Source of the DNA: Zootoca vivipara
Taxonomy: Eukaryota
Direction of reading: 5' to 3'
DNA length: 64,000 nt
NCBI RefSeq assembly: GCF_963506605.1
Contig: NC_083276.1
Coordinates: forward strand, 84,630,001-84,694,000
A model generated the notes under the pieces. That model was not told the DNA's origin, did no database searches, and was given only the letters and a program-made list of their open reading frames with translations. Shown in pieces: positions 6,701 to 49,521 of the stretch; position 1 is the first letter of the stretch; every line of letters starts with the position of its first letter. A program made the translations under genes and the position numbers.

Positions 6701-6892
6701 GTACGCTGTGCCACCACATCCACATCTCACAGTCACACTCATAACCACCACACCAGGCACTAGGTTAGAAAAAGGTACCTTCCAGCAGTCAGTAGCCTTA
6801 GTTAGAAATGGAGAGAACGCAACTTACGCCTTTTTGATGTCATCCGGTGAGGCGCCACGGGGCACCCCCAGCACTTCATAGTAATCCACCAT
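1..6892 (-). CDS. DNAJB2: DnaJ homolog subfamily B member 2 (copy 1, probable ortholog), 5' part; continues beyond the left edge
   Basis: Coding exons 6892-6828 (65 nt, [22 protein letters not shown]), 4937-4828 (110 nt, [36 protein letters not shown]), 3582-3529 (54 nt, [18 protein letters not shown]) and 57-<1 ([19 protein letters not shown]). All have GT-AG boundaries and consistent phases. HPD is intact and FTFTFR matches DNAJB2. Confidence 0.88.
708..2919 (-). mobile_element. 2.2-kb non-autonomous L1-type retroposon
   Basis: 19-bp TSD ccccaaagggctgctttca (689-707 and 2920-2938); CpG-rich 5' end starting GGCTTCCGG; AATAAA plus A-tail at the 3' end; no RT; acidic 162-aa ORF 1479..1967. 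Confidence 0.75.
1980..2082 (+). mobile_element. Penelope-like terminal fragment
   Basis: ctgaagaagtgtgcatgcacacgaaagctcatacc...gttggtctttaaggtgctact, flanked by a 14-bp duplication atagttcaatcctg (1966-1979 and 2083-2096). Confidence 0.65.
3529..3582 (-). CDS. DNAJB2: DNAJB2 copy 1, J-domain helix IV exon
   Basis: 54 nt, tttcag acceptor and gtaagg donor, [15 protein letters not shown]. Confidence 0.9.
3681..3711. repeat. (CA)n microsatellite
   Basis: Direct observation. Confidence 0.95.
4828..4937 (-). CDS. DNAJB2: DNAJB2 copy 1, HPD exon
   Basis: 110 nt, caaacag acceptor and gtaagc donor; lies within ORF 4664..4960. Confidence 0.92.
6241..6389 (+). mobile_element. Sauria SINE, 3' half
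   Basis: Matches the full copies in the window; ends ggggtccctttacct. Confidence 0.8.
6828..6892 (-). CDS. DNAJB2: DNAJB2 copy 1, first coding exon
   Basis: ATG at 6892 in cacc-ATG-G context; donor gtaagt at 6827-6822; acceptor tttgcag ending at 6912. Confidence 0.9.
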
Positions 6893-16104: not shown

Positions 16105-16646
16105 TCAGAGGACAGTGCACATGATGGATTCCCTCTCCCTGTGGGAAGGGATAATGTCGGGGAAGACATACCGCATGTCATTGAGGACCGAGTCATTCTC
16201 TTCAGGGGCCGCCGGCAAGGCGAGCTGCTGCTTCTCCGGTTCTTCAGTGCAGCCTCTGCCCTTTGGGCCTTCTGCTGGCTTGTCTTCCTTTGTGCTGTCT
16301 CCTGCACCCGGGCTCCTGGCTCTAATGGGAAAGGGAGCACCCGCCACTTCCTCGCTGAGCCCTGGCGTCCTTTTGTGTGCCCGCCAAGTGCCGCCTCGCC
16401 TCTTCCTGGAGCTGTCTCGGGCGGCGCCTGCCAGGTGCTGCTGCCCCAAGGTCTCCATCTCAGACAGGCTGTAGGCCAGGGTGGCCCGATGCAGCTCCTT
16501 GTCTTCGTCGTCAGGGTGGGCGCAAGAGAACCCTGCGCTCTGTGGGCGTGGCGGAGTCGGGATGTCCGTAGCAGACGAGCGCAGGATCTCGCGTTGCTCT
16601 GGCTGGATGAGCTCCACCGTGGCCTTCATGTCATTGTTGGTGAGGT
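16105..16646 (-). CDS. copy 2, terminal exon (UIM-like region and CaaX)
   Basis: Part of ORF 16105..16698 after the ctcctccag acceptor; [19 protein letters not shown]; ends CTVL-stop. Confidence 0.88.
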
Positions 16647-22600: not shown

Positions 22601-25600
22601 TGGTTTCTAGAAGTCTTCACATTAGAAGAAGCAATTATGGCTAGGAAAGGCGGAATTGATATTGGGGGGGGGGCGGATTTCCAAGAAAGCTCAACAAAAT
22701 TTGGGGTGTCCTGGTTTTTACTTTTTGAAATACTGTATGGCAACCCTAATATTGGCAATTATGTAATTTCTGCATTCCCCAGATATTACAGAAAGGACCA
22801 CCACGTAGCCAGCGTGTACAACCAATTTGTAGGAATACCTTTGTAACCTCAAGGATAGGCTACTATGATGCACTCTGTTTGGGTTGCATTCAGTTACTAT
22901 CTGGTGGGTTCAGCTAGTAGACAGTGTGGGATCCTGCTTCCATGCTGGGGTATGCCTCAAAAGATGGATGACACCTGTCATGTAGCATCTGCATTGGCTC
23001 TCTGTCCTGTTGCATTCCAGGCACAATGCAAGGTGCTAAATCTGATCTCTTAAGCCCCTTTGGCCGTTATGATTACTGAGTGCCTTCTTGAATACATTGT
23101 CCATGCACCAAATTCAAACAGCAAGGGCATGTGCTGTAGATACCGTGTTTCCCCTTTTTTAAGACACCGTCTTATAACTTTTTTTCCTCAAAAAAACACA
23201 AGGTGTCTTATTTTCAGGGGATGTCTTAATTTTTTATTACCATTTTTATTATGGACCCACCCTGGGGAGCAACTTCCTTTAAAAAGAGACAAGGAAAAAA
23301 GAGCAAAGGCAGCGGTGAGGGAGACACTTTGTGCATGCTCAGAGACCACCCCATCCCCAGCTATAAACCCACCCCGGTTTTCCAAGACGCCTTTTCCCCG
23401 GCACTGGACTGGCGGGGGGATGTGAAGGGGGTGTCTCTCTGTGCATGCTCAGAGGCAGCCTCGTCCCGGGCGCCGCTATGGGAGTGGAGGGCACTCACCT
23501 AACCATGACCCAGATCCCGGCCACGACGAGGCGCCGTGTGCCGGCAGCGGACTGAGCCGGAGCCCCTGGTGCAGGCCAGCGTTGAGCTCACTACCGGCCC
23601 CGCCGAGCACAGCCACGGGCCCATCGCCCAGCCCGCCCGCCTGCCTGCCTCCCGCTTCCCTGCCCACAAAATTCCGGCGGCGGGCCATGCAGCCCATGCC
23701 GCTCCAGCAGAGCGGAAGGGGCCAGCAGCGCTTCCGCCGCCGTCCGCACCCCGGCGCCACAGAAGGACCCGCGAGCCTCCCGCCACCGCTCTGCCTTGGG
23801 CCATGCGGCCCACAACATTCCGGCGGCGCGGATGGGGCCAGCAGGGCTCCCGCCGCCGCCCGTCACCCTGGCAGGGCCAGCGGGGCTCCTGCCGCCGCTC
23901 TGCCTTGGGCCATGCGGCCCACAACGTTCTGGCGGCGCGGATGGGGCCAGCAGGGCTCCCGCCGCCGCCCGTCACTCTGGCAGGGCTAGCGGGGCTCCCG
24001 CCGCCGCTCTGCCTCGGGCCATGCGGCCCACAACGTTCCGGTGGTGCAGAAGGTCCAACGGGCCTCCGGCCGCCGCTCTGCCTCGCCGCTCTGGCTGGGC
24101 ACTCCGCCCGGTGCTGCTGGACGTTCCGAGCGCTCGGCGCTGCGGAGCGCTCCACTCTGCAGCCGCCTGTTCCGGCGGCGGGGCGGCAGGCCTCCTCGGC
24201 CGGGCCAGGAAGAGGCCAGGCCGCTGGCTGGGCGCTCCACCCGGCGCTGCTGGGCGCTCTGAGCGCTCGGCGCTGCAGAGCGCTCCACTCTGCAGCCGCC
24301 TGTTTCGGCAGGTGGCTCGCCGCTGCAGCAGCTGGTTCCAGGCCCCGCTGGCTGGCTGGGGCGCTTGGCGGTCTCGCTGTATATGGTATGAGAGGTATGT
24401 CTTATTTTCGGGGGGTGTCTTAGATATAGCAACTCCTAAAAAATGCTGCCATGGCTTACTTTATGGCTACGTATTAAAAAAGGGGAAACACGGTAGGTGA
24501 GTTTGGTGGCTGACCTATAATTGCAGAACTCCTTTGTCCTAGAGTCCTTTGTCCAATCAAAGTCTGGGCCTGTAAGCTCTCCAGAATGGTTGCAGAACAT
24601 TTTTTCTTTGGCCTGGCATTCTGTGGCCAGGGTTAATCAAGCATGGTGTGATTTTGTTTGTTTGTTTGTTTTCTATATGAGTACTATTTCATCTTCTTTT
24701 TGTTTGTGTGTGTCATATTATTCTGTGCACTTGTAATTATGTCCTTTTTATTTTTCAATCTCTCTCTATATAAATGTTCCCACTTCGTGCGTGGAGGTCA
24801 CACCCTTGCTCTGTAACCGCTGAACCAAATTGCATCAAATTAGGGTAAAGCGTACCTTGCCCATCAGGGAGGGATCTGGCATAATTTCCCCCTCAAAAAA
24901 ACCACACCTTTCACACCTAAAATAATGATTAAACACAAAAAAGGTGGCGCCCAAATTAGACATCACCAGCAGAAGGTCTGAAGACTCCAGCAGCATCCAA
25001 TAGAAAGACAGAACGCACGCTGCTGCCTCCAAAGCCGTGCCACCAGATGACATCACAAAATTCCACAGCAACCAACTGAAAACAGGCCTTTTGCAGCAAC
25101 AAGGCCCAACTTTGCCCAGCAGACTGAATAGGCCGCAGCAGACTAGGCCGCTTTCCAGACTAGGCCAAGTGGAGGTAGGGGCCTGCCGGGGGGGATGGGG
25201 GGGCTGAATAGGGGGCATCGTATGGTTGCTTTGAAGTGCAATACTGTAATCTACCTGGAATCCTTGGGGAAAGGTAGGATAGAAATTGAATGCACCAAAC
25301 AACTTAAATAAAGGGCAGATTGCACAGATATTCCTAAAGGGGTAGGGGTGAATTAGATGTGCCCAACACAAAAGCCCCTGGACCTATTTACCTGCAATAT
25401 GGCAGTTTATCTACTCTGGAAAGGCTGCTATGTATCCACTTCTGTCAAAGGTGAAAAAAGTCAGTCGTTTTTTTAAAAATCCCAATAGCGAATAAAGGTG
25501 AGGAGAAGGAAGCAGGGTAAGATAGACCTCCCCAAGCTAAACTGGGCAGGCTCCAAACTGATCTGAGCCAAACTGGGCTATTTTATGAAGTGCCAAATTC

Positions 25601-25710
25601 GGGTCCATGTAACATCTTGTGGTTGGTGCACAATGTGCTACTTACGCCTTCTTAATGTCATCTGAGGAGGCAGTTTGAGGGATGTCCAGTGTTTGGTAGT
25701 AATCAACCAT
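16105..25710 (-). CDS. DNAJB2-like paralog (copy 2), 8 coding exons, 390 aa, ends in CaaX (CTVL)
   Basis: Exons 25710-25646 (65), 22451-22342 (110), 21509-21450 (60), 20597-20481 (117), 19205-19101 (105), 18758-18656 (103), 17306-17236 (71) and 16646-16105 (542) total 1173 nt in an open frame. Motifs: [54 protein letters not shown]. Confidence 0.9.
17236..17306 (-). CDS. copy 2, CTD exon
   Basis: [24 protein letters not shown], 71 nt. Confidence 0.9.
18028..18163. mobile_element. 136-bp hAT-type MITE
   Basis: caggcatccccaaact TIR, 8-bp TSD ggttaaac. Confidence 0.85.
18656..18758 (-). CDS. copy 2, S/T-CTD exon
   Basis: [34 protein letters not shown], 103 nt. Confidence 0.88.
19101..19205 (-). 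CDS. copy 2, coding exon 5
   Basis: [35 protein letters not shown], 105 nt, strong acceptor and gtaagg donor. Confidence 0.8.
20481..20597 (-). CDS. copy 2, G/F exon
   Basis: [39 protein letters not shown], 117 nt, gtatgt donor. Confidence 0.88.
21123..21316 (+). mobile_element. Bov-B/RTE LINE 3' fragment
   Basis: ggggtcacgaagagtcggacacgact and (caa)n tail; TSD atgctttcaggg. Confidence 0.88.
21450..21509 (-). CDS. copy 2, coding exon 3
   Basis: [20 protein letters not shown], 60 nt, GT-AG. Confidence 0.88.
22342..22451 (-). CDS. copy 2, HPD exon
   Basis: [36 protein letters not shown], 110 nt, GT-AG. Confidence 0.92.
23143..24493. mobile_element. 1351-bp GC-rich non-autonomous Tc1/mariner-pogo element, copy A
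   Basis: TIR ccgtgtttcccctttttt and aaaaaaggggaaacacgg, TA TSD, internal imperfect tandem repeats, no transposase. Confidence 0.85.
25646..25710 (-). CDS. copy 2, first coding exon
   Basis: [22 protein letters not shown], gtaagt donor; acceptor tttacag with exon start at 25738. Confidence 0.9.
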
Positions 25711-27398: not shown

Positions 27399-29023
27399 GG
27401 GGTGTGAGGCTGCAAGCTCTTGGTCATGGCCCAGGTGTATGGTACTTGGGAGGGGTTAGTAATTGAGGGAGGGGGACTCCAAGCCAGGGCATCACCATGT
27501 GACAACTAGAGGCTGGGATTCATCACAGACATGGAGAGGAAATGGTAAGGAATATATGGCACTGTGTGTGATCTGTTGTACAAAATAACGTATGAAACTG
27601 TGAAATAACATCTCTGTAACACAAAGTCATACAGCATATCTGTGGGTCCCTGAATAACACTGTTTTGTCATTGGCTTCCCCTTGTGTGTAGGGTTGGCTA
27701 GGATCCACCTGCAGCCAGACATGACCGGGCTCAGTTCTAGAACATGCAAAGGAATAATAAAGAAGAGTGTGTGTCTGAGCATGTGTCAAGCATTCTTTTG
27801 CTCACCCCTGAGGAACTACCATCGATCTCCATGTGTCTGGGATGAACTCCACTAACCCGGAAGTAGTACCTCGGGTTAAGAATTTTACCTCAGGATGAGA
27901 ACAGAAATCACATGGCAGCGGCGGCAGGAGGCCCTATTAGCTAAAGTGGTACCTCAGGTTAAGAATGGTTTCAGGTTAAGAACAGACCTCCGGAACAAAT
28001 TAAGTTCGTAACCAGAGGTACTACTGGTACTTGTCTCCTTGGCTCGGGGTCGCATAACTCCAAACCCTCCAACATTTCTCCAATGAAAATAAGGATGTCC
28101 TAAGGAAAAGCAGGACGTTCCAGGATCAAATCAGAAACCGGGAAAGCTTCTGTAAATCCAGGAATGACCCTGGAAAATAGGGACACTTTGAGGGTCTGCA
28201 GTAAATGCCTGCTTAGTTAGGTGTATGGGAGTCAGAGGTAGGTCCAATTATGATGATCAATTGGCTGAGGAGTGTTATTTCCCTGATCATGAGAAATCCC
28301 ATAATTTTGAGGTGCCTTTGGGCTTCAAAGCTAGGGAACAGCTGAGGTGGTGCCAGGAACTGATATTACAGAGGTGCCCTACAGTCTGTCACAATCACTA
28401 TTGTTTCTGTGCCGTAGAAAGCTAAATCTGTGAGTGTTGGACAAGTTGCTTTGGATTACAGCCTAACCAGTTGTTCCTATTTGTGCTTATAAAAACTCAC
28501 ACTGCAATGAAGCAGAGGGAAATAATCCATGAATTTTCTGAAGCCAAACTGCCGGCATGGTTGTTGATAAGTGATGCATGTCATGTAATGAATAGGTGCA
28601 TATAATTAATAGGTAGTGCATAGAGTGTACCAGTAATTCCTGAGGTAGGAAGCTTCAGACAGGACATAAAACGGTAATGATGATTGACATACATCTCCTA
28701 ATGAATTTCTCCTGCTCTGCTCCTGTTTGCAGAGTGATAAATGAAAAAATATATATGCAACAACAAAAACAAACCTCCTGAAATATGGCCATGCACTCAG
28801 TTCCAACTCATGGCAGTCACAATCCATATTAGGGGAAATACATTTAGCAGGTCAACCAAAATAGTGTACAAGCATTTGACTTCTCCAGAGGCTAGATGGC
28901 AGACAGAAAGCAGAGTTAGGGTAGGAAAAGGCCATGTGACCTGCATCTAATTACAGTCTGAAGATGGAGTGGGGGAGGTGGCGGTAGACATTCAAAACAG
29001 GCTAGTTATGTACTAGGCAGGTA

Positions 29024-30374
29024 CCGTGTTTCCCCTTTTTTAAGACACCGTCTTATAACTTTTTTTCCTCAAAAAAACACAAGGTGTCTTATTTTCAGGG
29101 GATGTCTTAATTTTTTATTACCATTTTTATTATGGACCCACCCTGGGGAGCAACTTCCTTTAAAAAGAGACAAGGAAAAAAGAGCAAAGGCAGCGGTGAG
29201 GGAGACACTTTGTGCATGCTCAGAGACCACCCCATCCCCAGCTATAAACCCACCCCGGTTTTCCAAGACGCCTTTTCCCCGGCACTGGACTGGCGGGGGG
29301 ATGTGAAGGGGGTGTCTCTCTGTGCATGCTCAGAGGCAGCCTCGTCCCGGGCGCCGCTATGGGAGTGGAGGGCACTCACCTAACCATGACCCAGATCCCG
29401 GCCACGACGAGGCGCCGTGTGCCGGCAGCGGACTGAGCCGGAGCCCCTGGTGCAGGCCAGCGTTGAGCTCACTACCGGCCCCGCCGAGCACAGCCACGGG
29501 CCCATCGCCCAGCCCGCCCGCCTGCCTGCCTCCCGCTTCCCTGCCCACAAAATTCCGGCGGCGGGCCATGCAGCCCATGCCGCTCCAGCAGAGCGGAAGG
29601 GGCCAGCAGCGCTTCCGCCGCCGTCCGCACCCCGGCGCCACAGAAGGACCCGCGAGCCTCCCGCCACCGCTCTGCCTTGGGCCATGCGGCCCACAACATT
29701 CCGGCGGCGCGGATGGGGCCAGCAGGGCTCCCGCCGCCGCCCGTCACCCTGGCAGGGCCAGCGGGGCTCCTGCCGCCGCTCTGCCTTGGGCCATGCGGCC
29801 CACAACGTTCTGGCGGCGCGGATGGGGCCAGCAGGGCTCCCGCCGCCGCCCGTCACTCTGGCAGGGCTAGCGGGGCTCCCGCCGCCGCTCTGCCTCGGGC
29901 CATGCGGCCCACAACGTTCCGGTGGTGCAGAAGGTCCAACGGGCCTCCGGCCGCCGCTCTGCCTCGCCGCTCTGGCTGGGCACTCCGCCCGGTGCTGCTG
30001 GACGTTCCGAGCGCTCGGCGCTGCGGAGCGCTCCACTCTGCAGCCGCCTGTTCCGGCGGCGGGGCGGCAGGCCTCCTCGGCCGGGCCAGGAAGAGGCCAG
30101 GCCGCTGGCTGGGCGCTCCACCCGGCGCTGCTGGGCGCTCTGAGCGCTCGGCGCTGCAGAGCGCTCCACTCTGCAGCCGCCTGTTTCGGCAGGTGGCTCG
30201 CCGCTGCAGCAGCTGGTTCCAGGCCCCGCTGGCTGGCTGGGGCGCTTGGCGGTCTCGCTGTATATGGTATGAGAGGTATGTCTTATTTTCGGGGGGTGTC
30301 TTAGATATAGCAACTCCTAAAAAATGCTGCCATGGCTTACTTTATGGCTACGTATTAAAAAAGGGGAAACACGG
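29024..30374. mobile_element. 1351-bp GC-rich non-autonomous element, copy B
   Basis: Same length and orientation as 23143-24493; internal ORF translations identical at offset 5881. Confidence 0.85.
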
Positions 30375-30560
30375 TATCAGGTTACACTAAGACCTCCTAA
30401 TGGCTGATCTCCCATCTCTTCAATAATGAAACCTGAATAAAACCTGGATAATAGCCCCTTAAGGTGGTGCCAGAGACAGTGGAATCACCCACCTGTATAC
30501 TTTGTAATTAAGTCTTTAATCATGCTTCCCACTAGTTTTCCCAGAATAGATGTTAAGCTA

Positions 30561-31305: not shown

Positions 31306-32541
31306 GGCCTATTGCCTTCATACCCTGTTTTTGAACTTACTGAAGACCCCTGGTTAGCCACTGTGGAAAGCCAAGTGCTGAACTAGGTTGTCCAGTGGTT
31401 TCATCCAGCTTGAGGTCTTTGGATGTTTATATGTTGGCATCTTATGTAGGCATGGGCAATCGGGGCAGAAATTCAAAGTATCGAGGAGGAAAAGCAAATG
31501 CTGTGGGGATAAATTCAGACAAAGCAGCAAGTGGCTTAAGTGTCATGGATATTGGGGACAGGCAACTATTTCAGCAAAGGGATCCCTGGGCCAAAGCACC
31601 ATTGTTCCTCTCCCCCTCAGCCCCTGGATACTCAGTGTTCCCATTGCTGCATCTGTTACGGTAGTTCAGGGATAGAAAACCTGTGACCCTCTCAATGTTA
31701 CTGGATTACAACCCCCGTCATCCCTTGCTGGCTGGGGCTGAGGGATTCTGGGAGTCCAGCATCTGGGGAGCCTCATAATAATTCCTATGTATCCTGTTGA
31801 GTAAATGAGGCATCTGGCCAAATCTGACCACCCCGGTCAGTAACTGGACTCTTGACCAAAGGCTATAAAACTGTAAAACTTCGTTTCAAGTGTCTGACTC
31901 TCATCTTAAGCAGCATGCAATGTTCTCGAAATAGCTATGCCGCTAAAGCATAAAGTGCTCTCGATGCACACAAGCTGACCACCTGTTGTTATGTCCTGTT
32001 GTTGTGTTATTGGTTGGAAATTCCCTAACAAAACAAAACTGGCTGACTACAAAGAGATCTAAATTCAGAGGTATATGCAAAGCGATGTATAGCTGCGCTT
32101 GAGTAGGTAACTGTCAGCTAGTTAGATACAATAATAGTTATTCAGCACCCCCTGGGGGAGCAAAACAGCAATGCAGCTTAAAACTAAGAAGGCAGCTGAT
32201 TGGTTAAAGGGATACTGCAGAGGGTCGGGTAAGGGGCAGACCTTTACTGTATGAAATTGTATTTAATACTCTGTACATGCAGATGGTTTTTGTGCAAGTA
32301 GAGAAGCTTTATTCTCGCTGCACCTTATTGCTTTTGTCTGACAGAAACAATAAAATTGTTCTTAGAACTTTGAAACTTTGCTGCCTGAAGTTTTTTCATC
32401 TGGTCTATGTCTGGAGTCCTAAAACACTGTATAACATAAGAGCAAGCAACAAGTATGAACAAATAAAATTTGGGTTCCTGACCCTTCCTTTATTGTACTC
32501 TCAAACACTCACTCCTTGCGGTGCCCAGCACTTATCCGCAC

Positions 32542-34181
32542 TCACAGGTTGTCGTTAAAGAGCTTGCACCAGCATTGGGAGCATCGCGGGCAGGAAGATG
32601 GGGCATTTGGGTCAAAAATTTCCCCTTGGCTAGTTAAATATGGAGGCCAAGTCTTTCCATTATGAGTTGGAGCATCAATATGTGGAAGAAGCAAGCTCTT
32701 CCTTGGATTTAATTGGTTTATTCTATTCCAGGCTTGGATATTTTCCCACTGGTTTCCTTGCATGGCCTGATTTGTTCCACGTGGTTTTCTTTTAGCCGGA
32801 AGTGGTGCTTGGCCAGCACCAGAGAACTCGGGGGCCCCACAGAAGAGAAACCTTGCTGCATTTTCTGCTGGACTAAGCCAAACGGTAGCTGGCACCTTCC
32901 ATGTATAGGCAGGCACAGTGCTCTCAGTGGGCTGGGGGGCTGCTTTGTTACCTGCCCAAACACTGTTTTGGACCTGCACCTTGCTTTTCCCAGCATTCAG
33001 CTGCTTCTTCTGGACTGCCACGTTGTTCTTCACAGCATGCAACTCATTTTTCTGGACTTTCATCCTGCTCCTCTCATCATTCAGTACCCTCTTTTGGACA
33101 TTCGCCTTGCTCTTCCCGGTGTGTGTCTTGTTTTCTCCAGCCTGCAGCTCACCCTTTTGGGAACGTATTGCTTTTCCATCTTTCAACTTTGGCGATATCA
33201 ACTTATTCATCCTCCCTGACATCTCCTTACTTTTGATTGGTGAGGTTTTCCTCCTAGTGTTCCTCAGGTGTCCAATACGTGGCTCCTGTTTGTCGGATCG
33301 TTCCTTCTGCCCAGCACCCTGCTCTGTCCCATGATCAGGTTCACATCCTGGATGGGATCTATGTTTCTGTACTGAAGATTTCTCAGTTTGCATCTCATGC
33401 TTTCCAGGGGGGGCATCAGCTTCCCCATTCCGAAGCTTGTTCTTGGTGTTTGGCTCTGACTTCTCATGCCGTTGTTTCGTTTTCCCTATATGAAGCTTAC
33501 TCTCACAATGCAGCTCAGTTTTTATCTTAGTAAACTTAGCCTTCCCCGTATGGGTCTCCCAATCTTCGCTCTGTTGCCTGGCCTTTTCTGCATAGGCCCC
33601 ATTCTTCTCAGTTGGGGCTTTCCTCTTCCCATTGTTGCTCTCGCTATTCTCCACAAGAGCTTCTTTACCAGACTTGCTGCTCCTAGTGTGCAATGCGCTG
33701 TTCTCAGCAGGCAGGTTTTTATCCCTAGTCTGCAATCTCTTTCTCCCATCCTGGAGCTGCTTACCCTTCCCGACTGGAAAATCATTTTTCTCAGGAGGCA
33801 ATTGGTTAAGCTTTGCCCGGTGTCTTTTGTGAGACTTTCTACGTGGATGCAAAGGAAGGGGCTTGTTAGGCTTCTGACTTTGATCATTGGACTCGGAATC
33901 TGACTCTGAATTTGATTCACTGGATTTGGAGCTTGACCTGCTACGTTCAGAACTGGACTCAGAACTGGATTCATTAGACTCATCAGAGTTCAAGGTGGAA
34001 TAATGCTCTGAACCCGATGACTCATCATCAGACTCAAATGTTGAGTCATCATACTCAGAACAAGAACTCTTATCATTCTCCACACTCAACTCGTCATCCT
34101 GAGAACTTGGTTTGTCTGGTTTGGTGTGGTCTTTCTCATCTACCGTGTTACTCTTGTGTTCCTCATGGGCAGGCATCACAC
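32542..34181 (-). CDS. copy 3, large terminal exon (546 aa)
   Basis: Uninterrupted ORF 32542..34230, tttattgcag phase-1 acceptor, polyA signal ~48 nt after the stop. Confidence 0.82.
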
Positions 34182-37100
34182 CTGCAATAAACCAAGTTTT
34201 TAAGTCTTGTGACAATTTTGCTCTGTTCACAGGACAAATCTAAGCCTGATTTCTATGTAGTGGAAACAGTTGTCTGTAGTCTGTAGTCTGTCAGACTGTA
34301 GTCCAGGCATTCCCAAACTTTGGCCCTCCAGATGTTTTGGACTACAATTCCCATCATCCCTGACCACTGGTCCTGTTAGCTAGGGATCATGGGAGTTGTA
34401 GGCCAAAACATCTGGAAGGCCGCAGTTTGGAGATGCCTGCTGTAGTCTGACAGTTAGGTTTTTCACCTTGGTTTCCTCTGCAACAACCGCCATGATAAAG
34501 GGGGGATAAGTCCCCTTTCTTATAAGCACACAGAAAATTTAATATTCAAGGATGAATCTTCAGGCGCATAACAAATACATTTCCTTCAGTTAGTAGAACT
34601 TAAGCATTTCAGAAAAGAAGATAAGTGAAATTAAAAGCATGTCACAATTTAATATATCAGAAAGATACTTATACCCAACTTCCTTTGAAAGAGATGCATT
34701 TTTCTAATCTTTCTCCATTATCAAAGAACAACAAGACTGCATTCCACAAAATATCTAACTTCTTGAAAGGATCTGATAATCATATGCCCAAAGTATATAC
34801 AATGCAACTTCTGCAACAATGTTGATTAAACATAGCTTATTATCATCAAAGCAAAATAATTTTAGCAACATCTAATAGAACTACATCAAATACAGTTTCT
34901 TTCTTTTTTTAAGTGTATCTGGATGGAAGTTACATAGATATATTATAAAAACCTAACTTGTACAAAAATGTGTTTGGCTCACATCTGAGCATAATAAAAG
35001 TATAAGTTATAAAATAGCATTGCTGTGAACACAACTTGTTCAAATAATCTATACAGGTGGTTTGATTAAGTCAGGCTAATTCAATATTTTCTCCTAAAAG
35101 GAGACAAAAGCATTTCGTTGCAAGATAGGAAATGGGGAATAGTGATGTGCTACTTTGACACACAGGTCTGGGCTACCTTTGAAGGATGTTACAAAAACAG
35201 AAAGATGTATTTGATTTCCATTTTAACAACTTTAATTGTGATGCTTTGGGGCGAGGTAAATTACCGTATCTTATAGGGCTTGTTCTAGTGTTTCCGGAAC
35301 CAATCAAAATGGATGCAAAAATGGGTTTTGAAGTGAGACTATTTGCCACAGTTTATTTAAAGGACAGTTCAGTTAGTGGCCTGGAATACTCAGCACTTCC
35401 ATCTTACTTTAAGGCAAAAATCAGCAAAGCTCATGTGTGAACCACAGCATATTTCCTATAAGTCCCCAAGGGTCTTCAGATACCCCAGGGTATCTCTTAG
35501 AGACCACCTGGTGAGCCCATTATTCTGAAGTGGTCAGGGCTCTTAGCATCATTAGACCCAAGTTGTTCTCTGCTCATTCATAGATAGATGGATCATTGAA
35601 TTAACATATATGACAATACAAGCAATAGAAGACAAGAAAGATTAAATAACAATGGATGACTGGTTCATCAATATATCATGGTGGTTAAATTTATTCTAAC
35701 AGTTAACTTTTCCTATTAACCCCAATGGTTTTTGTAGTGGTGGGATCTTACCAACCTCTACTCTTCCTTCTCCTGTTTTCTAACTCACTACTGGGGCATT
35801 ATGCTCTATAACTCCACCCACTTCTACCCCTTGTATCCTGCTCCTCTAAGGGAACCCTTTGACCCTTTCCTTCTCTGTTTCTATACTGCCTTTGCTTTCT
35901 CCACCTTCTCTGTCTTCCTCGTCTTCCTCCTCTCCCTTGCCTCCTACTTTAGCTCCTTCCTTCCGAGTTGCATCCATTATCCTCCTCTGCTAGCTTCCAG
36001 TCTCTCCTGCTTTCTCTTTAACCTGCTTCAGATGCACCATCAGTCGTGCCTTTATCCTCTGGCTGGTCAGGCATCCCTACAGCTTTAGTGATGCTACCTC
36101 ATTCTGCCTGACTCACCTCCCACCCAGACTGTCAGGCTGCAGGGCAGGCAGAAGAGCTGCGGCAATGCTAGTTCTCAAAAGCAGTTTATACCCTTAATTG
36201 GAAAGCAAGTTTGGGCAAACACCTGCTTAAGCAACCTTCTGGCCAGCTAAGTAATTGGTTCTCCATGAAGGAGTTGAAATTTCAAGCATAAGGAGCTGAC
36301 TGAGAAAGTGTGTTGTTAGCCAATGGGTTCTCCCCCCCCCTTTTTTTTTAGACTTCAAACATGTTTGGAAACATTCAGTGCACATGTTTTAAAACTAAAA
36401 ATAAATTCTAACTAATATATGCAGATATACCTGACACTGCTCATTAACATCTCCTAGTTGTTGATGCCTGCTTCACTCCAAATAGCACTTCCCATCTCTA
36501 ATTGTTCAAATCCCAGAGGGAAAGGTTCTGGGGAGCAGCAACTACAAATGGCGCTGTGTGCGTCTGGCCTATTGTTGGATGGAGGACACTACTGGGAAGA
36601 CAGCCAACAATAATTATGCAGGAGGGGGTGGAAACTGTTTATAAGATATGCCAGATACCAGCTTTTTAGCTCTTCTATAGGTCGAACCAGCACTTGAATT
36701 GTGGCTCCAAGGTTATAAAAAGTCAGGCAACACATTCTGCACAAGCTACAGCTTTGGAACAGTTGTCAAGGGAAGTTCCACGGAGTAGCTAAGCGCAAAA
36801 GGCTAAGCAGTGCAGGTTACTGAGAGCTGAAAAGCTATGAAAATTAAAAAGTACATGACATGCTTTGAAGTAGGTTATAAACCTGAAACAGAGTAGTGGG
36901 CAGGAATAAGGCACCCACAACTGAGCTAGCCAGCGAACACCCAGCATGTCAATACAGCACTTTCTGTCATGCATCAGATAATGATTTTGATTGTGCTCAA
37001 TCTGATCTCTGTCTGCCAGGTCAACCAGAGGCAAACAGCATTCTTATATTAATTGTGTGGCCTCTGGCTGGCTGACCCAGGATTCAATGCAGGTCAGCTG

Positions 37101-39919
37101 AGCTGACAACCTCAGTGGGGTTAAGTCAAAGCTGGATCCAATTAGAAAGCTGTTTCACTCTTTCTCTTCCACTGCCTTGGGTCCCAAACACGTTACAAGG
37201 AACAAGTGGCTGTTGCTGATCTTGGTCTCCCTGGTAACTTGTAATTAAAGAAGAAGTGCCATTATCACACTCTTAATTTCTTCATCCCTGCAAGCAGCAC
37301 CCATATTTAGCTAAATATTACCGGGGCAAGGTGGAAAGGCAGGTCACTGCTGCCACACATTACTCATCGCATGTTCTTTGGCCAGTGGTTGCAGCTCTGC
37401 GGATCAGGAAGAACTCCACAGAGAGACTCCTAATTGTGGCTTTCTCCATTTCCTCTCAGGCACGTGAGACTGAATTGTGAAATCACTCACCTTTTTCATT
37501 CTGTCTGTCCTGGAGGGAGCAATCCAGGTTATGCTTGTTTGCTGAAAGGCAGAAGATAGACCTGAAAGTTCTCCAGCCCTGCTGCAGCCAGCTGCAATCG
37601 CTTGATTCAGGATTTGGAAAACTACCACCCCTCTAGGCTCAAGGCATATATAAAACTGAAACTTATTGTATCCCCACCCCACCCCCAGTGACTAACCAGC
37701 TTTTTAAGAAGCTTACAGTTAGGGATAAACAAACCTGCCAGTTTCCGTTTCTCTCCCCTTTTTTAGTTTTTCCATCTTTAAATTCAATTCACCACATTCC
37801 TGCACCAGTTTGCATTTTTTTAAAAGTCTACGTGAAAATTCACCATCATTTCTTCTAATATCTGTATGCAATTCTGCCTAGCTTTTGCAAGGTATTTTCT
37901 CTTAACATGAATCATTTTTGTGTGTTGTTTTTGCTATATGCATTTTTACTTTCCTCTAATGTATACACAGGTGTTTGTTTTTTGTTTGTTTTAAGAACTG
38001 GATTGCAAAATTCAGGTAAGTGTGAATTTTGGAGAGCTGCATTTTGGCTTGCGTTTTGGTTTGGGAAGCATGAACAAGGTAGAGTCGCATTAAAATGCAA
38101 GCTGAAGCAAATTTATGCCCCTGTCCCTAGTTATAGTTAATTGCAGCAGCATAGGGAGCTATGAAAATGTGCAGAGATCCTGGCAGCTGTCTAAAGAAGA
38201 AGGCATATTGCAGGAGAGAAGCTCTAGGCACCTACTAATAGGACATGGACTGGTGGTGAAACTGCATGTTTCCCCATAGCTCCACTACTTCAGAAGAGCA
38301 TCCCAAAGCAATTTCCCAAAAGGAAGATGGCAATGTTGAGGCACAAATGGGACATCAGCCTCCTGTGCATATAAACAAAGAAGGTGATGCCTCCAGGCTG
38401 TCAGGAGATGTGTGTAGACTGCTGTTCTTTATCTATTGGGTTTGGACCAGTCTGACATAAGGTGGGTCATAGCAATGGCATCACAACGTTTGCTTCAAAA
38501 GAAAAAGAAAAGTAGAAAGATAGGGGCCTGGGAGCAGGCAGAGAAAAAAGTGTGGGTATATATCTACTCTAAATATTGGTGCGATTTCTGTACTAGTTAT
38601 AACTTGTTGTTTGCCTCTCCCCCTGCAAGCTTGGGGATTGCAGTTTGGCACAGGTGCTAAGAGAGATCTATCACCAGCTGGTTCCCACCCAGAACTGCAT
38701 TTCCCCGGGTTCGGGAGAAGACGGTTAAGCCTGTAGACCAGGCATCCCCAAACTTTGGCCCTCCAGATGTTTTGGACTAGAATTCCCATCTTCCCCGACC
38801 ACTGGTCCTGTTAGCTAGGGATCATGGGAGTTGTAGGCCAAAACATCTGGAGGGCCGCAGTTTGGGGATGCCTGCTGTAGACTTTTAAAGCATTGTCAAT
38901 AGATCCAGAGAGAGAAGGAGAAGGGGAATATATATGTTAGAAAATAAAATAAATGTGGGTCCCATGCTGCAGGTTGGGGTTAAAGATGCTTTTCAGGTGG
39001 GAAAAGACTGACGTTTACTGGTGTGGATTTCTAACCAGGATTGCTTCAGTGCATAGCACAGGTTGAAAAGACTCTCTCCCTCACTCTCTTGCTGATCAGC
39101 AACTAGGATCAACTTGTGTTTCATTGGGAAACCAAGGCACCAGTGAAGTGAGAAGAGCAGAAGGGTCTAGGAGTCTGAGCCCTTACTGTTTGACAGCGCT
39201 TTGTAGGCTTCCATTATCTCCTTGGACTTCTCTTCAGCTTCCTTTTTGTTATCTGGGTTTTTATCAGGATGCCACTTCTTCAGTTTTGCTCTGTACCTGT
39301 TCAGTTAAAAGAAAGGATGTAAAGAATTAGGTTCCAGGAGGCCTGTTTATTTTTTGAGCAAGTCATCCTGATTTGTTTGCACAAAAATTGTGCAGAGGTT
39401 ATACCACTCTGCCAAGTGGTGATTATCTCCCACTTCCCAGTGCTTTCCCCATCACTTTTTTTAAACAGCAAAATTCTACAAATAGAACCAGGTTTGTTGT
39501 ACAAGAGTACTGTAGTGCTCCTTGCTACTTATCACCCTGTACCCCTTCCTCACAGGTGGGTTATGTAGGTGCTACCCTGTTTCCCCTATTTTAAGACGTA
39601 GCCATAAAATAAGCCCTAGCAGCGTTTTTAAGCATTCAAGGAATATAAGCCATACCCCGAAAATAAGACATAGTGATAGGCGCAGCAGCAATGCCGGCCG
39701 CGGAAGGAGGAGGAAAAAAATAAGACATCCCCTGAAAATAAGCCATAGTGTTGTTTTTTTGAGTAAAAATAAATATAACACTGTGTCTTATTTTCGAAGA
39801 AACACGGTATTTATTGCACAAAGGATGTAAGATGGCATCTACCTGACTGGGTGAGAAATATGTGCAAAACTCCTGACTCTCTGGAAACAGTCTGCTTGGG
39901 ACCACCCGTTAATCACCTG

Positions 39920-39967
<48 letters not shown>

Positions 39968-40979
39968 TATATTTCTGCAACTCAAAATCAAACACATTGC
40001 CAACCTTAAAGAAGGAAAAATGCTTACTTCATTGACTTCTGAAGGTATTAGAATTCAGTGCTTCCTCATTGCCCCAACATAACAAATCCCCATTCCTAGC
40101 CATTAAAAGTATATACAGTCGTACCTCGGGTTGCGAACAACTCGGGTTGCGAACAACTCGGGTTACGAACTGCGCACCCCCGGAAGTGTTTTCGCCGCGC
40201 GTGCGTGCGCACAAGCGTCGAGCGCGCTTTGCGCATGCGCAAAGCATGAAAATAGCTAAAATAGCGCTTTGCGCATGCGCGAAACGGTGGTTCGGGCCCT
40301 TTTCGGGTTACGAACTTTTCGGGTTACGAACTGCGACCCAGAACGGATCGCGTTCGTAACCCAAGGTACCACTGTATAAGTATACTTGTGTTCATAATAG
40401 GTGACTCAGGATTCAATGCTGGCTTCTCTTTTCAAAACAGCACATACTCTTTTGCTATCTCATCCACACAACCCATTCATTCATTCATCCATTCTCCCCC
40501 TCCTCTCTGTCCTATACACACAATGTAGCCTCCCCCTTCCCTAGCTGCATTTAGGCCTCACGAAACCTTCCTACTGGAGCCAACAGAAGGGTTTCTCCAG
40601 CCTAAATAAGTATGGCGCAAAGGCATTTTTTGCAAGGGGGAAGATTAACTTTCCCCTCCCTAGCTGTGACTCTGGCTTGAAAAGAAATCAATTAGGCTTG
40701 AAAACGAATCCTATTGGCTTCGGTAGGAAAGTCTCTTGAAGACTAAATGTGATGCTGGGGATGAGGAGGGAAGAATGGAGGCTGTGAGCTAGACAGGGCA
40801 GCCTCAAGGCTGGCGGTTCCTCGGGCGAAATGAATGCTCTGAAGGCTGACTTACGCCATTTTAATGTCGTGATGCGTTGCACCCTGGGGAATGCCCAGGA
40901 CTTCATAATAGTCCTTGTCATCTTTTGTCTGTCCTGTTGAGAGACTTGGAGGGACACTGGGGTGTCTTGGCTGACCCAT
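32542..40979 (-). CDS. Divergent DNAJB2-derived J-domain protein (copy 3), ~641 aa, with long charged low-complexity C-terminus
   Basis: Exons 40979-40855 (125; MGQPRH...[22 protein letters not shown]), 39296-39187 (110; [36 protein letters not shown]), 37541-37491 (51; [17 protein letters not shown]) and 34181-32542 (1640) total 1926 nt in frame; AATAAA at 32494-32489. The join to the terminal exon is inferred from phase and position. Confidence 0.75.
34304..34439. mobile_element. 136-bp hAT-type MITE
   Basis: TSD ctgtagtc. Confidence 0.85.
37491..37541 (-). CDS. copy 3, coding exon 3 (divergent helix IV)
   Basis: 51 nt, tctgcctttcag acceptor and AAG|gtgagt donor, phase 1-1. Confidence 0.65.
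38739..38874. mobile_element. 136-bp hAT-type MITE
   Basis: TSD ctgtagac. Confidence 0.85.
39187..39296 (-). CDS. copy 3, HPD exon (absent from the ORF track)
   Basis: 110 nt, gaacag acceptor and gtaagg donor, [10 protein letters not shown]. Confidence 0.9.
39575..39807. mobile_element. Short MITE related to the 1351-bp elements
   Basis: ccctgtttcccc and gaaacacgg ends, TA flanks, shared tgtcttattttc/ataagcc subterminal motifs. Confidence 0.7.
39924..39964. repeat. (AT)n microsatellite
   Basis: Direct observation. Confidence 0.95.
40116..40374. mobile_element. Tigger/mariner-type MITE, CpG-rich (young)
   Basis: cagtcgtacctcgggtt and aacccaaggtaccactg TIRs, TA TSD. Confidence 0.8.
40855..40979 (-). 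CDS. copy 3, first coding exon with N-terminal extension
   Basis: DYYEVLGIP motif, gtaagt donor; nearest in-frame ATG at 40979; acceptor ttctattctgcag with exon start at 41017. Confidence 0.75.
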
Positions 40980-42850: not shown

Positions 42851-42986
42851 CTCACAGTCTCAAAGGATTTTTCCTGATGATTGACACATCCTTTGGTATC
42901 TTCATTTTCCATGTAGGCAGAGCCCTAGTCACTCAGAGCTGCTGCCCGGGGTAAGAAAAGAGGAGCTTGATTGTGATGTCAGGGGC
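42851..42986 (-). promoter_or_regulatory. copy 3 promoter module and probable 5'UTR exon
   Basis: gattgtgatgtcagggg identical to the copy 2 promoter (TGATGTCA at 42974); CCAAT position degenerate; candidate donor GAG|gtaggg with exon end at 42851. Confidence 0.55.
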
Positions 42987-47852: not shown

Positions 47853-49467
47853 GTAAAGGTAAAGGGACCCCTGACCATTAGGTCCAGTCGTGACCGACTC
47901 TGGGGTTGCGGCACTCATCTCGCTCTGTTGGCCGAGGGAGCCGGCGTACAGCTTCCAGGTAATGTGGCCAGCATGACAAAGCCACTTCAAGCAAACCAGA
48001 GCAGCACACGGAAATGCCGTTTACCTTCCCGCCGGAGTGGTACTGGTACCTATTTATCTACTTGCACTTTGACGTGCCTTCGAACTGCTAGGTTGGCAGG
48101 GGCAGGGACCAAGCAACGGGAGCTCACCCCGTCGTGGGGATTCGAACCGCCGACCTTCTGATTGGCAAGTCCTAGGCTCTGTGGTTTAACCCACAGCGCC
48201 ACCCGTGTCCCTAATTAATATGGTCATGGTGGTCAAAAGGAAGAATTACAACAGTGAAATGTCAGATTTGAATTCTGCACTCTCCCAATTCACAGGCTAG
48301 GTTTATACAGCCCGTAAGTCTGTGGCGAGTGGTGGCTCCAGGTTCTGGTGACCCCTTGGGTGAGGGGGGCTCACTGAGGATCCCTCAGTGAGCCCCCCTC
48401 CTCACCAAGTCACTGTTGCCCACTTAGTTCTCTCCCTCTGGGCCCACCCTGATCATTTGTCCACAGCAGGGTTTCTAAAACTTGGTTCTCCAGTTGTTTT
48501 TTAACTACAACGCCCATCATCTCTAATTAGCAGGAACAGTGGTCAAGGCTTATGGGGAATTATAGTCTAAAAGTACCTAGAGACCCAAGTTTGGGAAACC
48601 ATGATGAAGAGGAAGCTGCTGTTCCATCTCCTTCCTCCTGTCACAGCATACTTGTAGAGCAGGGGTGTCAAACTCAAATTCATCGGGGGCCGCATCAGCA
48701 GTTTGGTCTCCCTCAAAGGGCCAGTTGTATCTGTAGGACTATGTGTCCACTCTTTATTATCATAAATTATTGTCACTGCATTCAATTATTACTGTTTTTT
48801 GTAATAATGTAAGTAATAACTAGCAGAAACATAGTCAGAATAATGGCAAGTAGATATTCAAATGTACAATTATTGTACAATTTATTGAAAAATGATTTTT
48901 GGTAACTGCACTGGGTGGTGGAGGCTCGCTAGGGTTTCATGCAGGACCTTTGCAGAGCTACTAGTACCTGGAGATGCTGGGGTCCTTCTGCATGCAGGAC
49001 AGATGTTCTGCCAGTGAGCCACCACCCTTCACCAAAGGGACTGGCTGAGGTTGACTCACTGGAGCTGCTCTCCTGGTTCCAGGGTTTAAGGGCCAGAAGT
49101 ATAAAGCAGCATNNNNNNNNNNNNNNNNNNNNNNNNNNNNNNNNNNNNNNNNNNNNNNNNNNNNNNNNNNNNNNNNNNNNNNNNNNNNNNNNNNNNNNNN
49201 NNNNNNNNNNNNNNNNNNNNNNNNNNNNNNNNNNNNNNNNNNNNNNNNNNNNNNNNNNNNNNNNNNNNNNNNNNNNNNNNNNNNNNNNNNNNNNNNNNAG
49301 AGAAAGAAGAGTAGGAAATAAGGAAGGGAATAAAGAAGGAAAGAAAAAGAAAGAGGGAGAGAAGACGGAAAGGGAGAAAGATGGAAGGAAGTAGAGGGAA
49401 AGAAAGAATAAGAATGAGGGAGAGGAAGAAAGTTGGGAAGGACGGAAGGACGGAAGGACGGAAGGAA

Positions 49468-49521
<54 letters not shown>

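What the first reader, a model, noticed from the sequence alone, without database searches (positions are those of the whole stretch)
32542..40979. Copy 3: J-domain fused to a novel 546-aa tripartite low-complexity tail, with no G/F, CTD or UIM
Seen: after three J-domain exons I find no DNAJB2-like downstream exons, only a 1640-nt phase-matched exon with a polyA signal. It encodes an S/D/E-rich acidic block, a long K/E/N/Q-rich basic region and a terminal Cys cluster (CPRCSQCWC). The J-domain keeps HPD, but KFKEI becomes KSKEI and helix IV is divergent. Established: the G/F helix V (xVFxxFFG) autoinhibits class B J-domains. Inference: this may be an un-autoinhibited, class C-like J-protein tethering Hsp70 to chromatin, a condensate or a structural element.
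Basis: partly seen in the sequence, partly recalled or inferred. Interest (0 to 1): 0.78.

Follow-up and report, generated by a model that had tools for sequence, protein, structure and literature searches.

The report
Lizard J-protein with long floppy tail
This is a real gene found only in lizards and snakes: an old copy of the Hsp70 helper gene DNAJB2 that kept its Hsp70-docking head in altered form and swapped the rest for a long unstructured tail of unknown role.

Summary
On the minus strand lie J-domain exons (40979-40855, 39296-39187, 37541-37491) and a phase-matched 1640-nt terminal exon (34181-32542) followed by AATAAA.

- **Identity.** The exon-4 product is 100% identical to RefSeq XP_034965511.1, "uncharacterized protein LOC118082318" of Zootoca vivipara (624 aa). 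So the gene is annotated but unstudied: five paper searches found nothing on it.
- **Exon 3.** The RefSeq model skips the 51-nt third J exon (helix IV). Models of 8 other squamates include it.
- **Distribution.** Orthologues occur in geckos, cordylids, lacertids, a worm lizard, iguanians and snakes. A profile search of 1.84 billion proteins found the tail nowhere else.
- **Tail.** It is predicted disordered but has three nearly invariant islands.
- **J-domain.** It keeps HPD, but all 14 J-bearing orthologues carry Ser in place of the KFK phenylalanine. F-to-A at that position abolished function in four tested J-domains.
- **Missing parts.** No G/F or UIM exon is present, whereas the three neighbouring copies keep G/F and canonical helix IV.
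- **Expression.** Three Zootoca RNA runs gave no reads on this gene, so the splice junctions remain unproven here.

Verdict: a squamate-specific, class-C-type DNAJB2 derivative; its function is inferred only. The scan had already noted a neighbouring paralogue with a different tail (s1-853069).

The parts
42851..42912 (-). Alternative upstream 5' exon (MENEDTKGCVNHQEKSFETV, ends in phase 2, donor GTAGGG). It is in frame with exon 2 but not with exon 1.
   Evidence: tblastn of the Lacerta model P0003 gives 20 of 21 identical. Sequence and donor were read. Similar N-termini occur in the Phrynocephalus P0009 and Paroedura P0044 models.
40855..40979 (-). Exon 1: start codon, a 22-aa N-terminal extension and J-domain helix I ([20 protein letters not shown]).
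   Evidence: 100% match to P0001 residues 1-42. Pfam DnaJ positions 1-20. Donor GTAAGT.
39187..39296 (-). Exon 2: J-domain helix II, HPD loop and helix III, with KSK in place of KFK.
   Evidence: Pfam DnaJ 45.4 bits against a cut-off of 27.8. Best PDB match is DNAJB2 2lgw. It is the most conserved island of the protein, residues 48-73, mean column conservation 0.87.
37491..37541 (-). Exon 3: 51-nt cassette coding a degenerate helix IV ([16 protein letters not shown]). The Zootoca RefSeq model skips it.
   Evidence: Good splice sites. 88.9% identity to the Lacerta model. Included in 8 and skipped in 5 of 14 J-bearing models.
33847..34181 (-). Start of exon 4: acidic Ser/Asp/Glu block (residues 80-190) containing the conserved [12 protein letters not shown] motif.
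   Evidence: Composition: S 30%, net charge -19. Invariant Y122, S125, F127, S129. pLDDT below 50.
32932..33846 (-). Basic Lys-rich region (residues 191-495) with degenerate 14-aa repeats (K.EL.AGK.K.NVQ) and conserved basic clusters (GKRKA, TRRK).
   Evidence: Net charge +38. The repeat is clear in the Hemicordylus orthologue P0023. Basic clusters were listed. pLDDT is 29-39.
32545..32931 (-). C-terminal conserved region (residues 496-624): [17 protein letters not shown] (32910-32860), predicted helix [16 protein letters not shown] (32757-32710) and Cys cluster CPRCSQCWC (32592-32566).
   Evidence: Invariant columns. Conservation islands 503-519 (0.92) and 610-616 (0.90). Coordinates verified. 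AF2 gives only weak helices, with mean pLDDT 54 for this part alone.
32489..32544 (-). Stop codon (32544-32542) and the first AATAAA (32494-32489).

Best explanation
**What it is.** This is an intact protein-coding gene confined to squamates, RefSeq LOC118082318 in Zootoca vivipara. It arose by tandem duplication of DNAJB2 before the living squamate groups split. It kept the two or three 5' exons coding the J-domain. It lost the G/F, helix-V and UIM exons and instead ends in one 1640-nt exon coding a 545-residue disordered tail.

**How it most likely works (inferred).** It acts as a class-C-type (J-domain-only) Hsp70 co-chaperone or adaptor. The HPD-bearing J-domain docks Hsp70. The tail decides where and on what, through three nearly invariant short motifs: [10 protein letters not shown], an amphipathic [15 protein letters not shown] helix and a C-terminal CxxCxxCxC cluster. 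The tail's acidic phospho-Ser-type block followed by a Lys-rich block with NLS-like clusters suggests a nuclear or nucleic-acid/condensate setting.

**State of the J-domain (inferred).** It is probably tuned down or altered rather than hyperactive, because Ser sits at the KFK phenylalanine position and helix IV is degenerate and optional.

**Shown versus inferred.** Shown here: gene structure, orthology, conservation, predicted disorder and absence of relatives. Inferred: Hsp70 recruitment, localisation and the attenuation.
For: - **Identity.** The exon-4 product is 100% identical to XP_034965511.1, which carries PF00226.
- **Orthologues.** They are 41-88% identical and 561-654 aa long in lacertids, Rhineura, iguanians and snakes, plus a cordylid and a gecko. 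The gene tree follows squamate phylogeny with 9 of 13 inner branches strongly supported.
- **Chance.** Expected number of chance ORFs of this length in the window is about 7e-8.
- **Ancestry.** The J exon's best PDB match is DNAJB2, and the gene sits in a tandem array of four J-gene copies.
- **J-domain conservation.** HPD and KS(K/R)E are present in 14 of 14 J-bearing orthologues, and exon 2 is the most conserved island. AF2 gives J helices I-III at pLDDT 88-95.
- **Tail disorder.** 534 of 624 residues have pLDDT below 50.
- **Tail conservation.** Even so, the tail is 39-66% identical, by region, between lacertids and snakes or iguanians, with invariant islands.
- **No G/F, no UIM**.
- **Known kind.** J-domain-only proteins with disordered regions are a large recognised part of class C (PMC10410713, passages).
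Against: - **No transcript evidence in this species.** Three Zootoca RNA-seq runs, each about 1.09 billion letters read (about 6% of the run), gave zero depth on the 33500-34181 part of exon 4 and on exon 3. The few reads on exon 2 belong to paralogue copy 1. The tissue is unknown.
- **J-domain may not work.** F47A at the KFK position abolished function in E. coli DnaJ, Ydj1, an Hdj1 chimera and a Pfj4 chimera, and a large hydrophobic residue was judged the minimum requirement (PMC1906734 passages). The Ser here may therefore prevent Hsp70 stimulation.
- **Separate isoforms elsewhere.** Predicted isoforms of other species include tail-only forms (Hemicordylus X2, X3) and a J-only form (Pantherophis X4).
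- **No fold and no partner.** Localisation rests on composition and motif patterns alone. AF2 of the C-terminal part gave pTM 0.18.
Confidence: 0.6

Rival explanations
1. The J-domain is a relic that no longer stimulates Hsp70. The protein would then work through its tail alone, or the J-like head would only bind Hsp70 passively as a decoy or anchor.
For: - Ser replaces the KFK phenylalanine in 14 of 14 orthologues.
- F47A abolishes function in four tested J-domains (PMC1906734 passages).
- F47 is among the J residues in contact with the Hsp70 NBD/linker in a simulation study (PMC13012618 passage).
- Helix IV is degenerate and skipped in 5 of 14 models.
- Tail-only isoforms are predicted in Hemicordylus.
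Against: - Exon 2 (helix II, HPD, helix III) is the most conserved part of the whole protein. It is 93.9% identical between Zootoca and Anolis over 33 residues, and its island conservation is 0.87. A dead domain would not be expected to show this.
- HPD-K-N, Y25, the basic helix II and L57 equivalents are all kept (my reading against the numbering in PMC1906734).
- Helix IV and D59 are dispensable in tested J-domains, including an Hsj1 chimera.
- AF2 still folds helices I-III at pLDDT 88-95.
Confidence: 0.22
2. The J exons and the large exon are two functional units that are mostly expressed apart: a short J-only protein and a tail-only protein from an internal promoter. The fused models would then be minor forms or annotation products.
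For: - Pantherophis isoform X4 is J-only, 104 aa.
- Hemicordylus X2 and X3 and Paroedura X3 lack all or most of the J-domain.
- There is no junction read in Zootoca.
- Phase compatibility by itself has a 1 in 3 chance.
Against: - Fused models exist in 14 of the 16 rows compared, from gecko to snake, always with the same junction position.
- Both possible junctions (exon 2->4 and exon 3->4) are in frame in Zootoca.
- No other downstream J-gene exon exists for these J exons.
- The two rows without J (Crotalus P0014, Logan P0010) start with translated intron-like sequence, so they look like incomplete calls and not tail-only genes.
Confidence: 0.12
3. A decaying DNAJB2 duplicate lying beside a chance or non-functional ORF.
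For: Helix IV is degenerate, the KFK Phe is lost, and there are no RNA reads in three runs.
Against: - A 565-codon open stretch is expected about 7e-8 times by chance in the window.
- The ORF is kept in all the squamate species found, with invariant motifs and a gene tree that follows the species tree.
Confidence: 0.02

Closest known systems
DNAJB2 (HSJ1), the parent gene
   Same: The J-domain exon's best solved relative is DNAJB2 (2lgw, E 2.1e-10). The gene has the same intron positions and phases at the J exons. It lies in tandem with DNAJB2-like copies that keep helix IV, G/F and, in copy 2, a UIM exon.
   Different: It has no G/F region, no helix V and no UIM. The KFK Phe is replaced by Ser. 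Helix IV is degenerate and optional. There is a 22-aa N-terminal extension and a 545-aa unrelated terminal exon.
Class C 'J-domain-only' proteins with disordered regions (as surveyed in PMC10410713)
   Same: It has a J-domain and no other InterPro/Pfam domain. The tail is predicted disordered. Class C is defined by exclusion, and about 100,000 J-proteins carry only a J-domain (passages).
   Different: This one has a traceable recent class-B origin, is confined to one reptile order, and carries a non-hydrophobic residue at the KFK position.
Neighbouring squamate DNAJB2 paralogue with a Tyr-rich tail (earlier scan finding s1-853069; its tail ORF is at window 62854-63972)
   Same: It has the same design as described in that note: a DNAJB2-type J-domain followed by one long disordered terminal exon. 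It is on the same strand in the same gene array.
   Different: The tails show no detectable similarity (hhalign probability 0.9%). I did not examine that gene's J exons, which lie outside the window.
Cysteine-string protein DNAJC5
   Same: It has an N-terminal J-domain plus a Cys cluster elsewhere in the protein. DNAJC5 J-domains are among the PDB matches (2n04, 2ctw).
   Different: There are only 4 Cys in 9 residues, at the extreme C-terminus. My recollection that DNAJC5 has a far longer, palmitoylated central string comes from no call. The J-domain is nearer to DNAJB2/6/8. The resemblance is only a lead for possible lipid or zinc binding.

Membership tests
J-domain proteins (PF00226) | Profile match above Pfam's gathering score | tested here: met
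   Exon 2 alone scores 45.4 bits against a cut-off of 27.8. The RefSeq protein P0001 scores 68.3 bits over profile positions 1-56 of 63.
J-domain proteins (PF00226) | HPD tripeptide between helices II and III | tested here: met
   WHPDKN at 39274. Present in 14 of 14 J-bearing orthologues.
J-domain proteins (PF00226) | Large hydrophobic residue at the KFK position of helix III (F47 of E. coli DnaJ) | tested here: not met
   Ser in 14 of 14 orthologues. Phe in the three best PDB matches shown and in window copies 1, 2 and 4. The requirement is taken from PMC1906734 passages.
J-domain proteins (PF00226) | Four-helix fold including helix IV | tested here: inconclusive
   AF2 gives helices I-III at pLDDT 88-95 for the RefSeq form, which lacks exon 3. 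Exon 3 lacks KRxxYDxYG. With exon 3, the Hemicordylus protein matches all 63 Pfam positions.
J-domain proteins (PF00226) | Stimulates Hsp70 ATPase | not testable with these tools
   Needs a biochemical assay.
Class B / DNAJB2 subfamily | G/F-rich region with helix V after the J-domain | tested here: not met
   Motif scans find G/F exons for copies 1, 2 and 4 (19, 20559, 51400) but none between 41000 and 26000. The tail has 8 Phe in 545 residues and no G/F run.
Class B / DNAJB2 subfamily | Ubiquitin-interacting motifs | tested here: not met
   A pattern that hits the copy-2 control exon gives 0 hits in P0001 and 4 orthologues. Pfam was uninformative because it also missed the control.
Class B / DNAJB2 subfamily | J-domain sequence nearest to DNAJB2/6/8 | tested here: met
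   The top four PDB matches are DNAJB2, DNAJB8, HCG3 and DNAJB6. This shows descent, not present membership.
Class C J-proteins (defined by exclusion) | J-domain without the class A/B G/F, zinc-finger and CTD modules | tested here: met
   Only PF00226 is found. There is no G/F. The tail is disordered in AF2.

The most novel reading that the evidence does not exclude
Squamates have kept, since before their living groups split, a rewired J-domain that retains HPD but carries an invariant Ser where every tested J-domain needs a bulky hydrophobic residue, and that has lost the G/F brake and made helix IV optional. This could be a natural conditional J-domain, for example one switched by phosphorylation of that Ser or by a partner. 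It would tether Hsp70 only weakly or on demand to a nuclear or condensate scaffold built by the charge-blocked tail, whose three invariant motifs engage a squamate-specific partner. Together with the neighbouring Tyr-rich paralogue, it would mark a reptile-specific radiation of DNAJB2-derived adaptors with new disordered tails.
Probability: 0.15. Interest if true: 0.65.

Novelty: new member of a known kind. Interest (0 to 1): 0.42.

Why it matters
J-domain proteins decide where Hsp70 acts. Here a class B gene (DNAJB2, a human neuropathy gene) has been turned into a class-C-type adaptor by exon loss and the gain of one long disordered exon, and the origin can be dated and its intermediates examined. 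Gecko and cordylid still have a near-canonical helix IV. Lacertids, snakes and iguanians have lost its Tyr-Asp core.

The fixed Ser at the KFK position is a natural test of a residue that mutagenesis calls essential. If the domain still works, it would show how far the J-Hsp70 interface can be retuned.

The practical value is modest. The gene is already annotated, is unstudied, and is restricted to lizards and snakes.

Tried and rejected
- **RNA evidence.** Three raw RNA runs of the same species plus one contig run were laid on 33500-39450. They gave no reads on exons 3 or 4. The two high peaks (34296-34494, 38674-38872) are an interspersed repeat in the introns. The few reads on exon 2 carry flanks identical to copy 1 exon 2 (window 4858-4887) and to its spliced exon 1. 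The runs therefore contain a paralogue's mRNA but none of this gene. This neither proves nor refutes the junction. The tissue is unknown.
- **ESM Atlas.** The tail could not be read. With the stored RefSeq protein the best non-J hit scored 0.76, below the level that shuffled proteins reach. Rejected.
- **AF2 of the C-terminal 135 residues.** Mean pLDDT 54, pTM 0.18. This is too poor for a fold search, so none was run.
- **Common origin of paralogue tails.** hhalign against the Tyr-rich ORF 62857-63972 gave probability 0.9%. Against ORF 1482-1967 it gave 0.04%. Rejected at this sensitivity.
- **Weak hits of the big search.** The 16 hits below 1e-10 all but one fall on profile positions about 335-460, the Lys-rich repeat zone. 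The three I read (P0026, P0028, P0032) are simple 7-residue repeat proteins. One hit is a bacterial T9SS protein matching 23 positions. I rejected them as compositional. I did not read the other 12.
- **Tandem repeats at DNA level in exon 4.** Only two 12-nt, 2.2-copy arrays were found. The 14-aa repeat is visible only at protein level and is clearest in Hemicordylus.
- **UIM checks.** My first UIM pattern failed its positive control, and Pfam also missed the control. Both were discarded in favour of the pattern used.
- **N-myristoylation of MG...** Rejected because Gly2 is Ser in the gecko and corn snake models.
- **Paper searches.** Searches found nothing on this gene. One search was badly designed: common words swamped it. 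Supplementary files were not asked for, so expression or proteome tables there may mention these accessions.
Full report
**What is in the sequence**

- Exon 1 (40979-40855) starts with ATG. It codes a 22-residue extension and then [20 protein letters not shown].
- Exon 2 (39296-39187) codes [36 protein letters not shown].
- Exon 3 (37541-37491, 51 nt) codes [16 protein letters not shown].
- Exon 4 (34181-32542, 1640 nt) opens with the last two bases of a Gly codon and runs 545 codons to the stop.

All have AG/GT splice sites. AATAAA follows the stop by 48 nt. The open stretch of 565 codons is expected about 7e-8 times by chance in this window. Pfam recognises exon 2 as DnaJ (45.4 bits, cut-off 27.8) and finds nothing in the tail.

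**Identity**

The exon-4 product is 100% identical to a 624-aa protein in the public collection: XP_034965511.1, "uncharacterized protein LOC118082318 [Zootoca vivipara]", which carries PF00226. The window is therefore common-lizard DNA, and the gene is already annotated without a function.

My own searches went exon by exon, and the full-length sequences used afterwards are database records.

It joins exon 2 directly to exon 4 (…LSNS|VMPAHE…) and skips exon 3. Both paths are in frame, because exon 2 ends in phase 1 and exon 3 is 51 nt long.

**Distribution**

The word-based search gave 14 proteins, all squamate: Podarcis, Lacerta, Rhineura, Phrynosoma, Pogona, two Anolis, Phrynocephalus, Candoia, Python, Pantherophis, Crotalus and one unnamed Logan contig.

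I then ran a three-sequence profile of the tail alone against 1.84 billion representative proteins. It gave 21 hits at E<=0.001.
- Five are orthologues. Two were new: Hemicordylus capensis (a cordylid) and Paroedura picta (a gecko).
- The other 16 are weak (E 1e-14 to 5e-4). All but one fall on the Lys-rich repeat zone, and the three I read are simple repeat proteins.

So the tail is present in Gekkota, Scincoidea, Lacertoidea, Iguania and Serpentes and was seen nowhere else. A maximum-likelihood tree of 16 rows follows squamate phylogeny: gecko, cordylid and the unnamed row form an unresolved group apart from the rest, then come Lacertoidea, and then snakes plus iguanians (9 of 13 inner branches starred). 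The gene therefore predates the split of living squamates. My figure for that split, roughly 200 million years, is recalled and comes from no call.

**The J-domain**

The best solved relative of exon 2 is human DNAJB2 (2lgw), closely followed by DNAJB8, HCG3 and DNAJB6. The window holds four J-gene copies on the same strand, with exon 1/exon 2 at 6886/4939, 25704/22453, 40979/39296 and 57196/53983.

Copies 1, 2 and 4 keep three canonical features:
- KFK (RFK in copy 4) in helix III;
- a canonical helix-IV exon, KR..YD.[YW]G, at 3577, 21504 and 53195;
- a G/F helix-V exon at 19, 20559 and 51400.

Copy 2 also has a UIM exon (16105-16698). Copy 3 has none of the three. It keeps HPD.

In all 14 orthologues that have exon 2, HPD is present and the KFK Phe is Ser. 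Exon 2 is the most conserved island of the whole protein (residues 48-73, 0.87).

Helix IV shows a gradient. Gecko and cordylid have NKR.LYDC[YF]LKDR. Lacertids, snakes and iguanians are one residue shorter and lack the Tyr-Asp core. The exon is included in 8, skipped in 5 and replaced by a short different piece in 1 of 14 models.

Passages of PMC1906734 bear on these changes.
- F47A at this position abolished function in E. coli DnaJ, yeast Ydj1, an Hdj1 chimera and a Pfj4 chimera.
- Leu was tolerated, and a large hydrophobic residue was judged the minimum requirement.
- Helix IV was proposed to be non-essential in E. coli DnaJ.
- D59A was tolerated even in an Hsj1 (DNAJB2) chimera.

A simulation paper lists F47 among the J residues that contact the Hsp70 NBD/linker (PMC13012618, one passage). 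AF2 still folds helices I-III of the RefSeq protein at pLDDT 88-95.

My reading is that the domain is under strong constraint and so is used, but its coupling to Hsp70 is probably altered or weakened.

**The tail**

| Region (residues) | Composition | Identity, Zootoca vs iguanians/snakes |
|---|---|---|
| 80-190 | 30% Ser, net charge -19, 12 S..[DE] sites | 50-59% |
| 191-495 | net charge +38, several basic clusters | 39-48% |
| 496-624 | neither acidic nor basic | 52-66% |

The conserved basic clusters of the middle region are GKRKA and T[RK]KK; a third, KRKP, lies in the C-terminal region.

The middle region holds degenerate 14-residue repeats (K.EL.AGK.K.NVQ). They are expanded into near-perfect copies in Hemicordylus.

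Three islands are nearly invariant from gecko to snake: [29 protein letters not shown] and [11 protein letters not shown].

AF2 with the 14-sequence alignment gives pLDDT below 50 for 534 of 624 residues, with only weak helices at 516-524, 554-569 and 613-621. The C-terminal part folded alone gives pTM 0.18. So the tail is a disordered region carrying short conserved motifs, not a domain. It shows no similarity to the Tyr-rich tail ORF of the next gene or to ORF 1482-1967.

**Transcripts**

The one read-laying run covered 33500-39450 with three raw RNA-seq runs of the same species and one contig run.
- Depth was zero on the exon-4 part and on exon 3 in all runs, and at most 1.13 on exon 2.
- The flanks of those few reads are identical to copy 1 exon 2 and to its spliced exon 1.
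- The two large peaks are an intronic interspersed repeat.

These samples, of unknown tissue and with about 6% of each run read, therefore express a paralogue but not this gene. The junctions are unproven in Zootoca.

Indirect support comes only from gene models of other species. Those also include predicted tail-only isoforms (Hemicordylus X2, X3; Paroedura X3 has most of the J-domain missing) and a J-only isoform (Pantherophis X4). My understanding that RefSeq predicts extra isoforms only with transcript support is recalled and was not checked.

An upstream alternative first exon (42912-42851) matches the Lacerta model in 20 of 21 residues. It is in frame with exon 2 but not with exon 1.

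**Explanation and rivals**

Best reading (0.6): a squamate-specific, DNAJB2-derived, class-C-type J-protein. Its tail motifs choose the place or client, and its retuned J-domain engages Hsp70. The charge blocks and basic clusters suggest a nuclear or condensate setting, but that is inference.

Rivals:
- the J-domain is a relic or a passive binder (0.22);
- the J part and the tail are mostly expressed apart (0.12);
- a decaying duplicate beside a chance ORF (0.02), which the conservation contradicts.

That class B J-domains are autoinhibited is stated in the start of an abstract I saw in a search listing (10.64898/2026.02.06.704373).

**Known or new**

J-domain-only proteins with disordered regions are a large recognised group. 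About 100,000 sequences carry only a J-domain, and the authors note that many class C members have just disordered regions (PMC10410713 passages).

Searches for six locus names, six protein accessions, three automatic names, and DNAJB2 with 'squamate' found no paper on this gene (one search was uninformative). Supplements were not opened.

I file this as a new member of a known kind, of moderate interest.

**Limits**
- No orthologous DNA was available, so there is no dN/dS, no synteny and no check of exon 3 in species whose models skip it.
- The tissue of the RNA runs is unknown.
- The motif scans for G/F and UIM are pattern-based.
- Twelve of the 16 weak profile hits were not read.

Noticed in passing
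window 42851-42912 (-): An upstream alternative first exon (MENEDTKGC...) is shared with the Lacerta, Phrynocephalus and Paroedura models. In Zootoca it is in frame with exon 2 only, which would give an isoform without J-domain helix I.
   Followed up: partly
window 34296-34494 and 38674-38872: Two copies of an interspersed repeat lie in the introns; their translations share [19 protein letters not shown]. They draw hundreds-fold RNA depth with many variant letters and chimeric joints, i.e. reads from many genomic copies.
   Followed up: partly
window 23127-24508 and 29008-30389: A 1.38-kb GC-rich segment is duplicated 5881 nt apart at about 99-100% identity, with internal 109-nt tandem units. 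It lies between copy 2 and copy 3. It may be a recent duplication or an assembly repeat.
   Followed up: partly
window 19; 3577; 4826-4939; 6827-6886 (copy 1), 16105-16698; 20559; 21504; 22340-22453; 25645-25704 (copy 2), 51400; 53195; 53870-53983; 57137-57196 (copy 4): Three further DNAJB2-like genes lie on the same strand and keep KFK/RFK, canonical helix IV and the G/F helix-V exon. Copy 2 also has a UIM exon and so looks like the canonical DNAJB2. Copy 1 mRNA, with exons 1 and 2 spliced, is present in run X16.
   Followed up: partly
window 52435-53142 (-) and 54268-54843 (+): Two ORFs share a long motif (…[27 protein letters not shown]…[18 protein letters not shown]). They are probably fragments of one interspersed element inside copy 4's introns. 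I did not identify it.
   Followed up: no
window 48929-50161, around the N run 49113-49298: Long ORFs here are artefacts of a Ser/Phe/Leu-coding simple repeat flanking the masked gap. The gap was left untouched.
   Followed up: no
P0023 / P0041 (Hemicordylus capensis orthologue): The 14-residue Lys-rich repeat is expanded into about six near-identical copies (.TELHAGRDKVNVE). Repeat number in the basic region therefore varies between lineages.
   Followed up: partly
window 1479-1967 (-): A 162-aa acidic ORF (many D/E, several C) lies downstream of copy 1's helix-IV exon. It is unrelated to the copy-3 tail by hhalign. Whether it is an exon of copy 1 or of another gene was not examined.
   Followed up: partly
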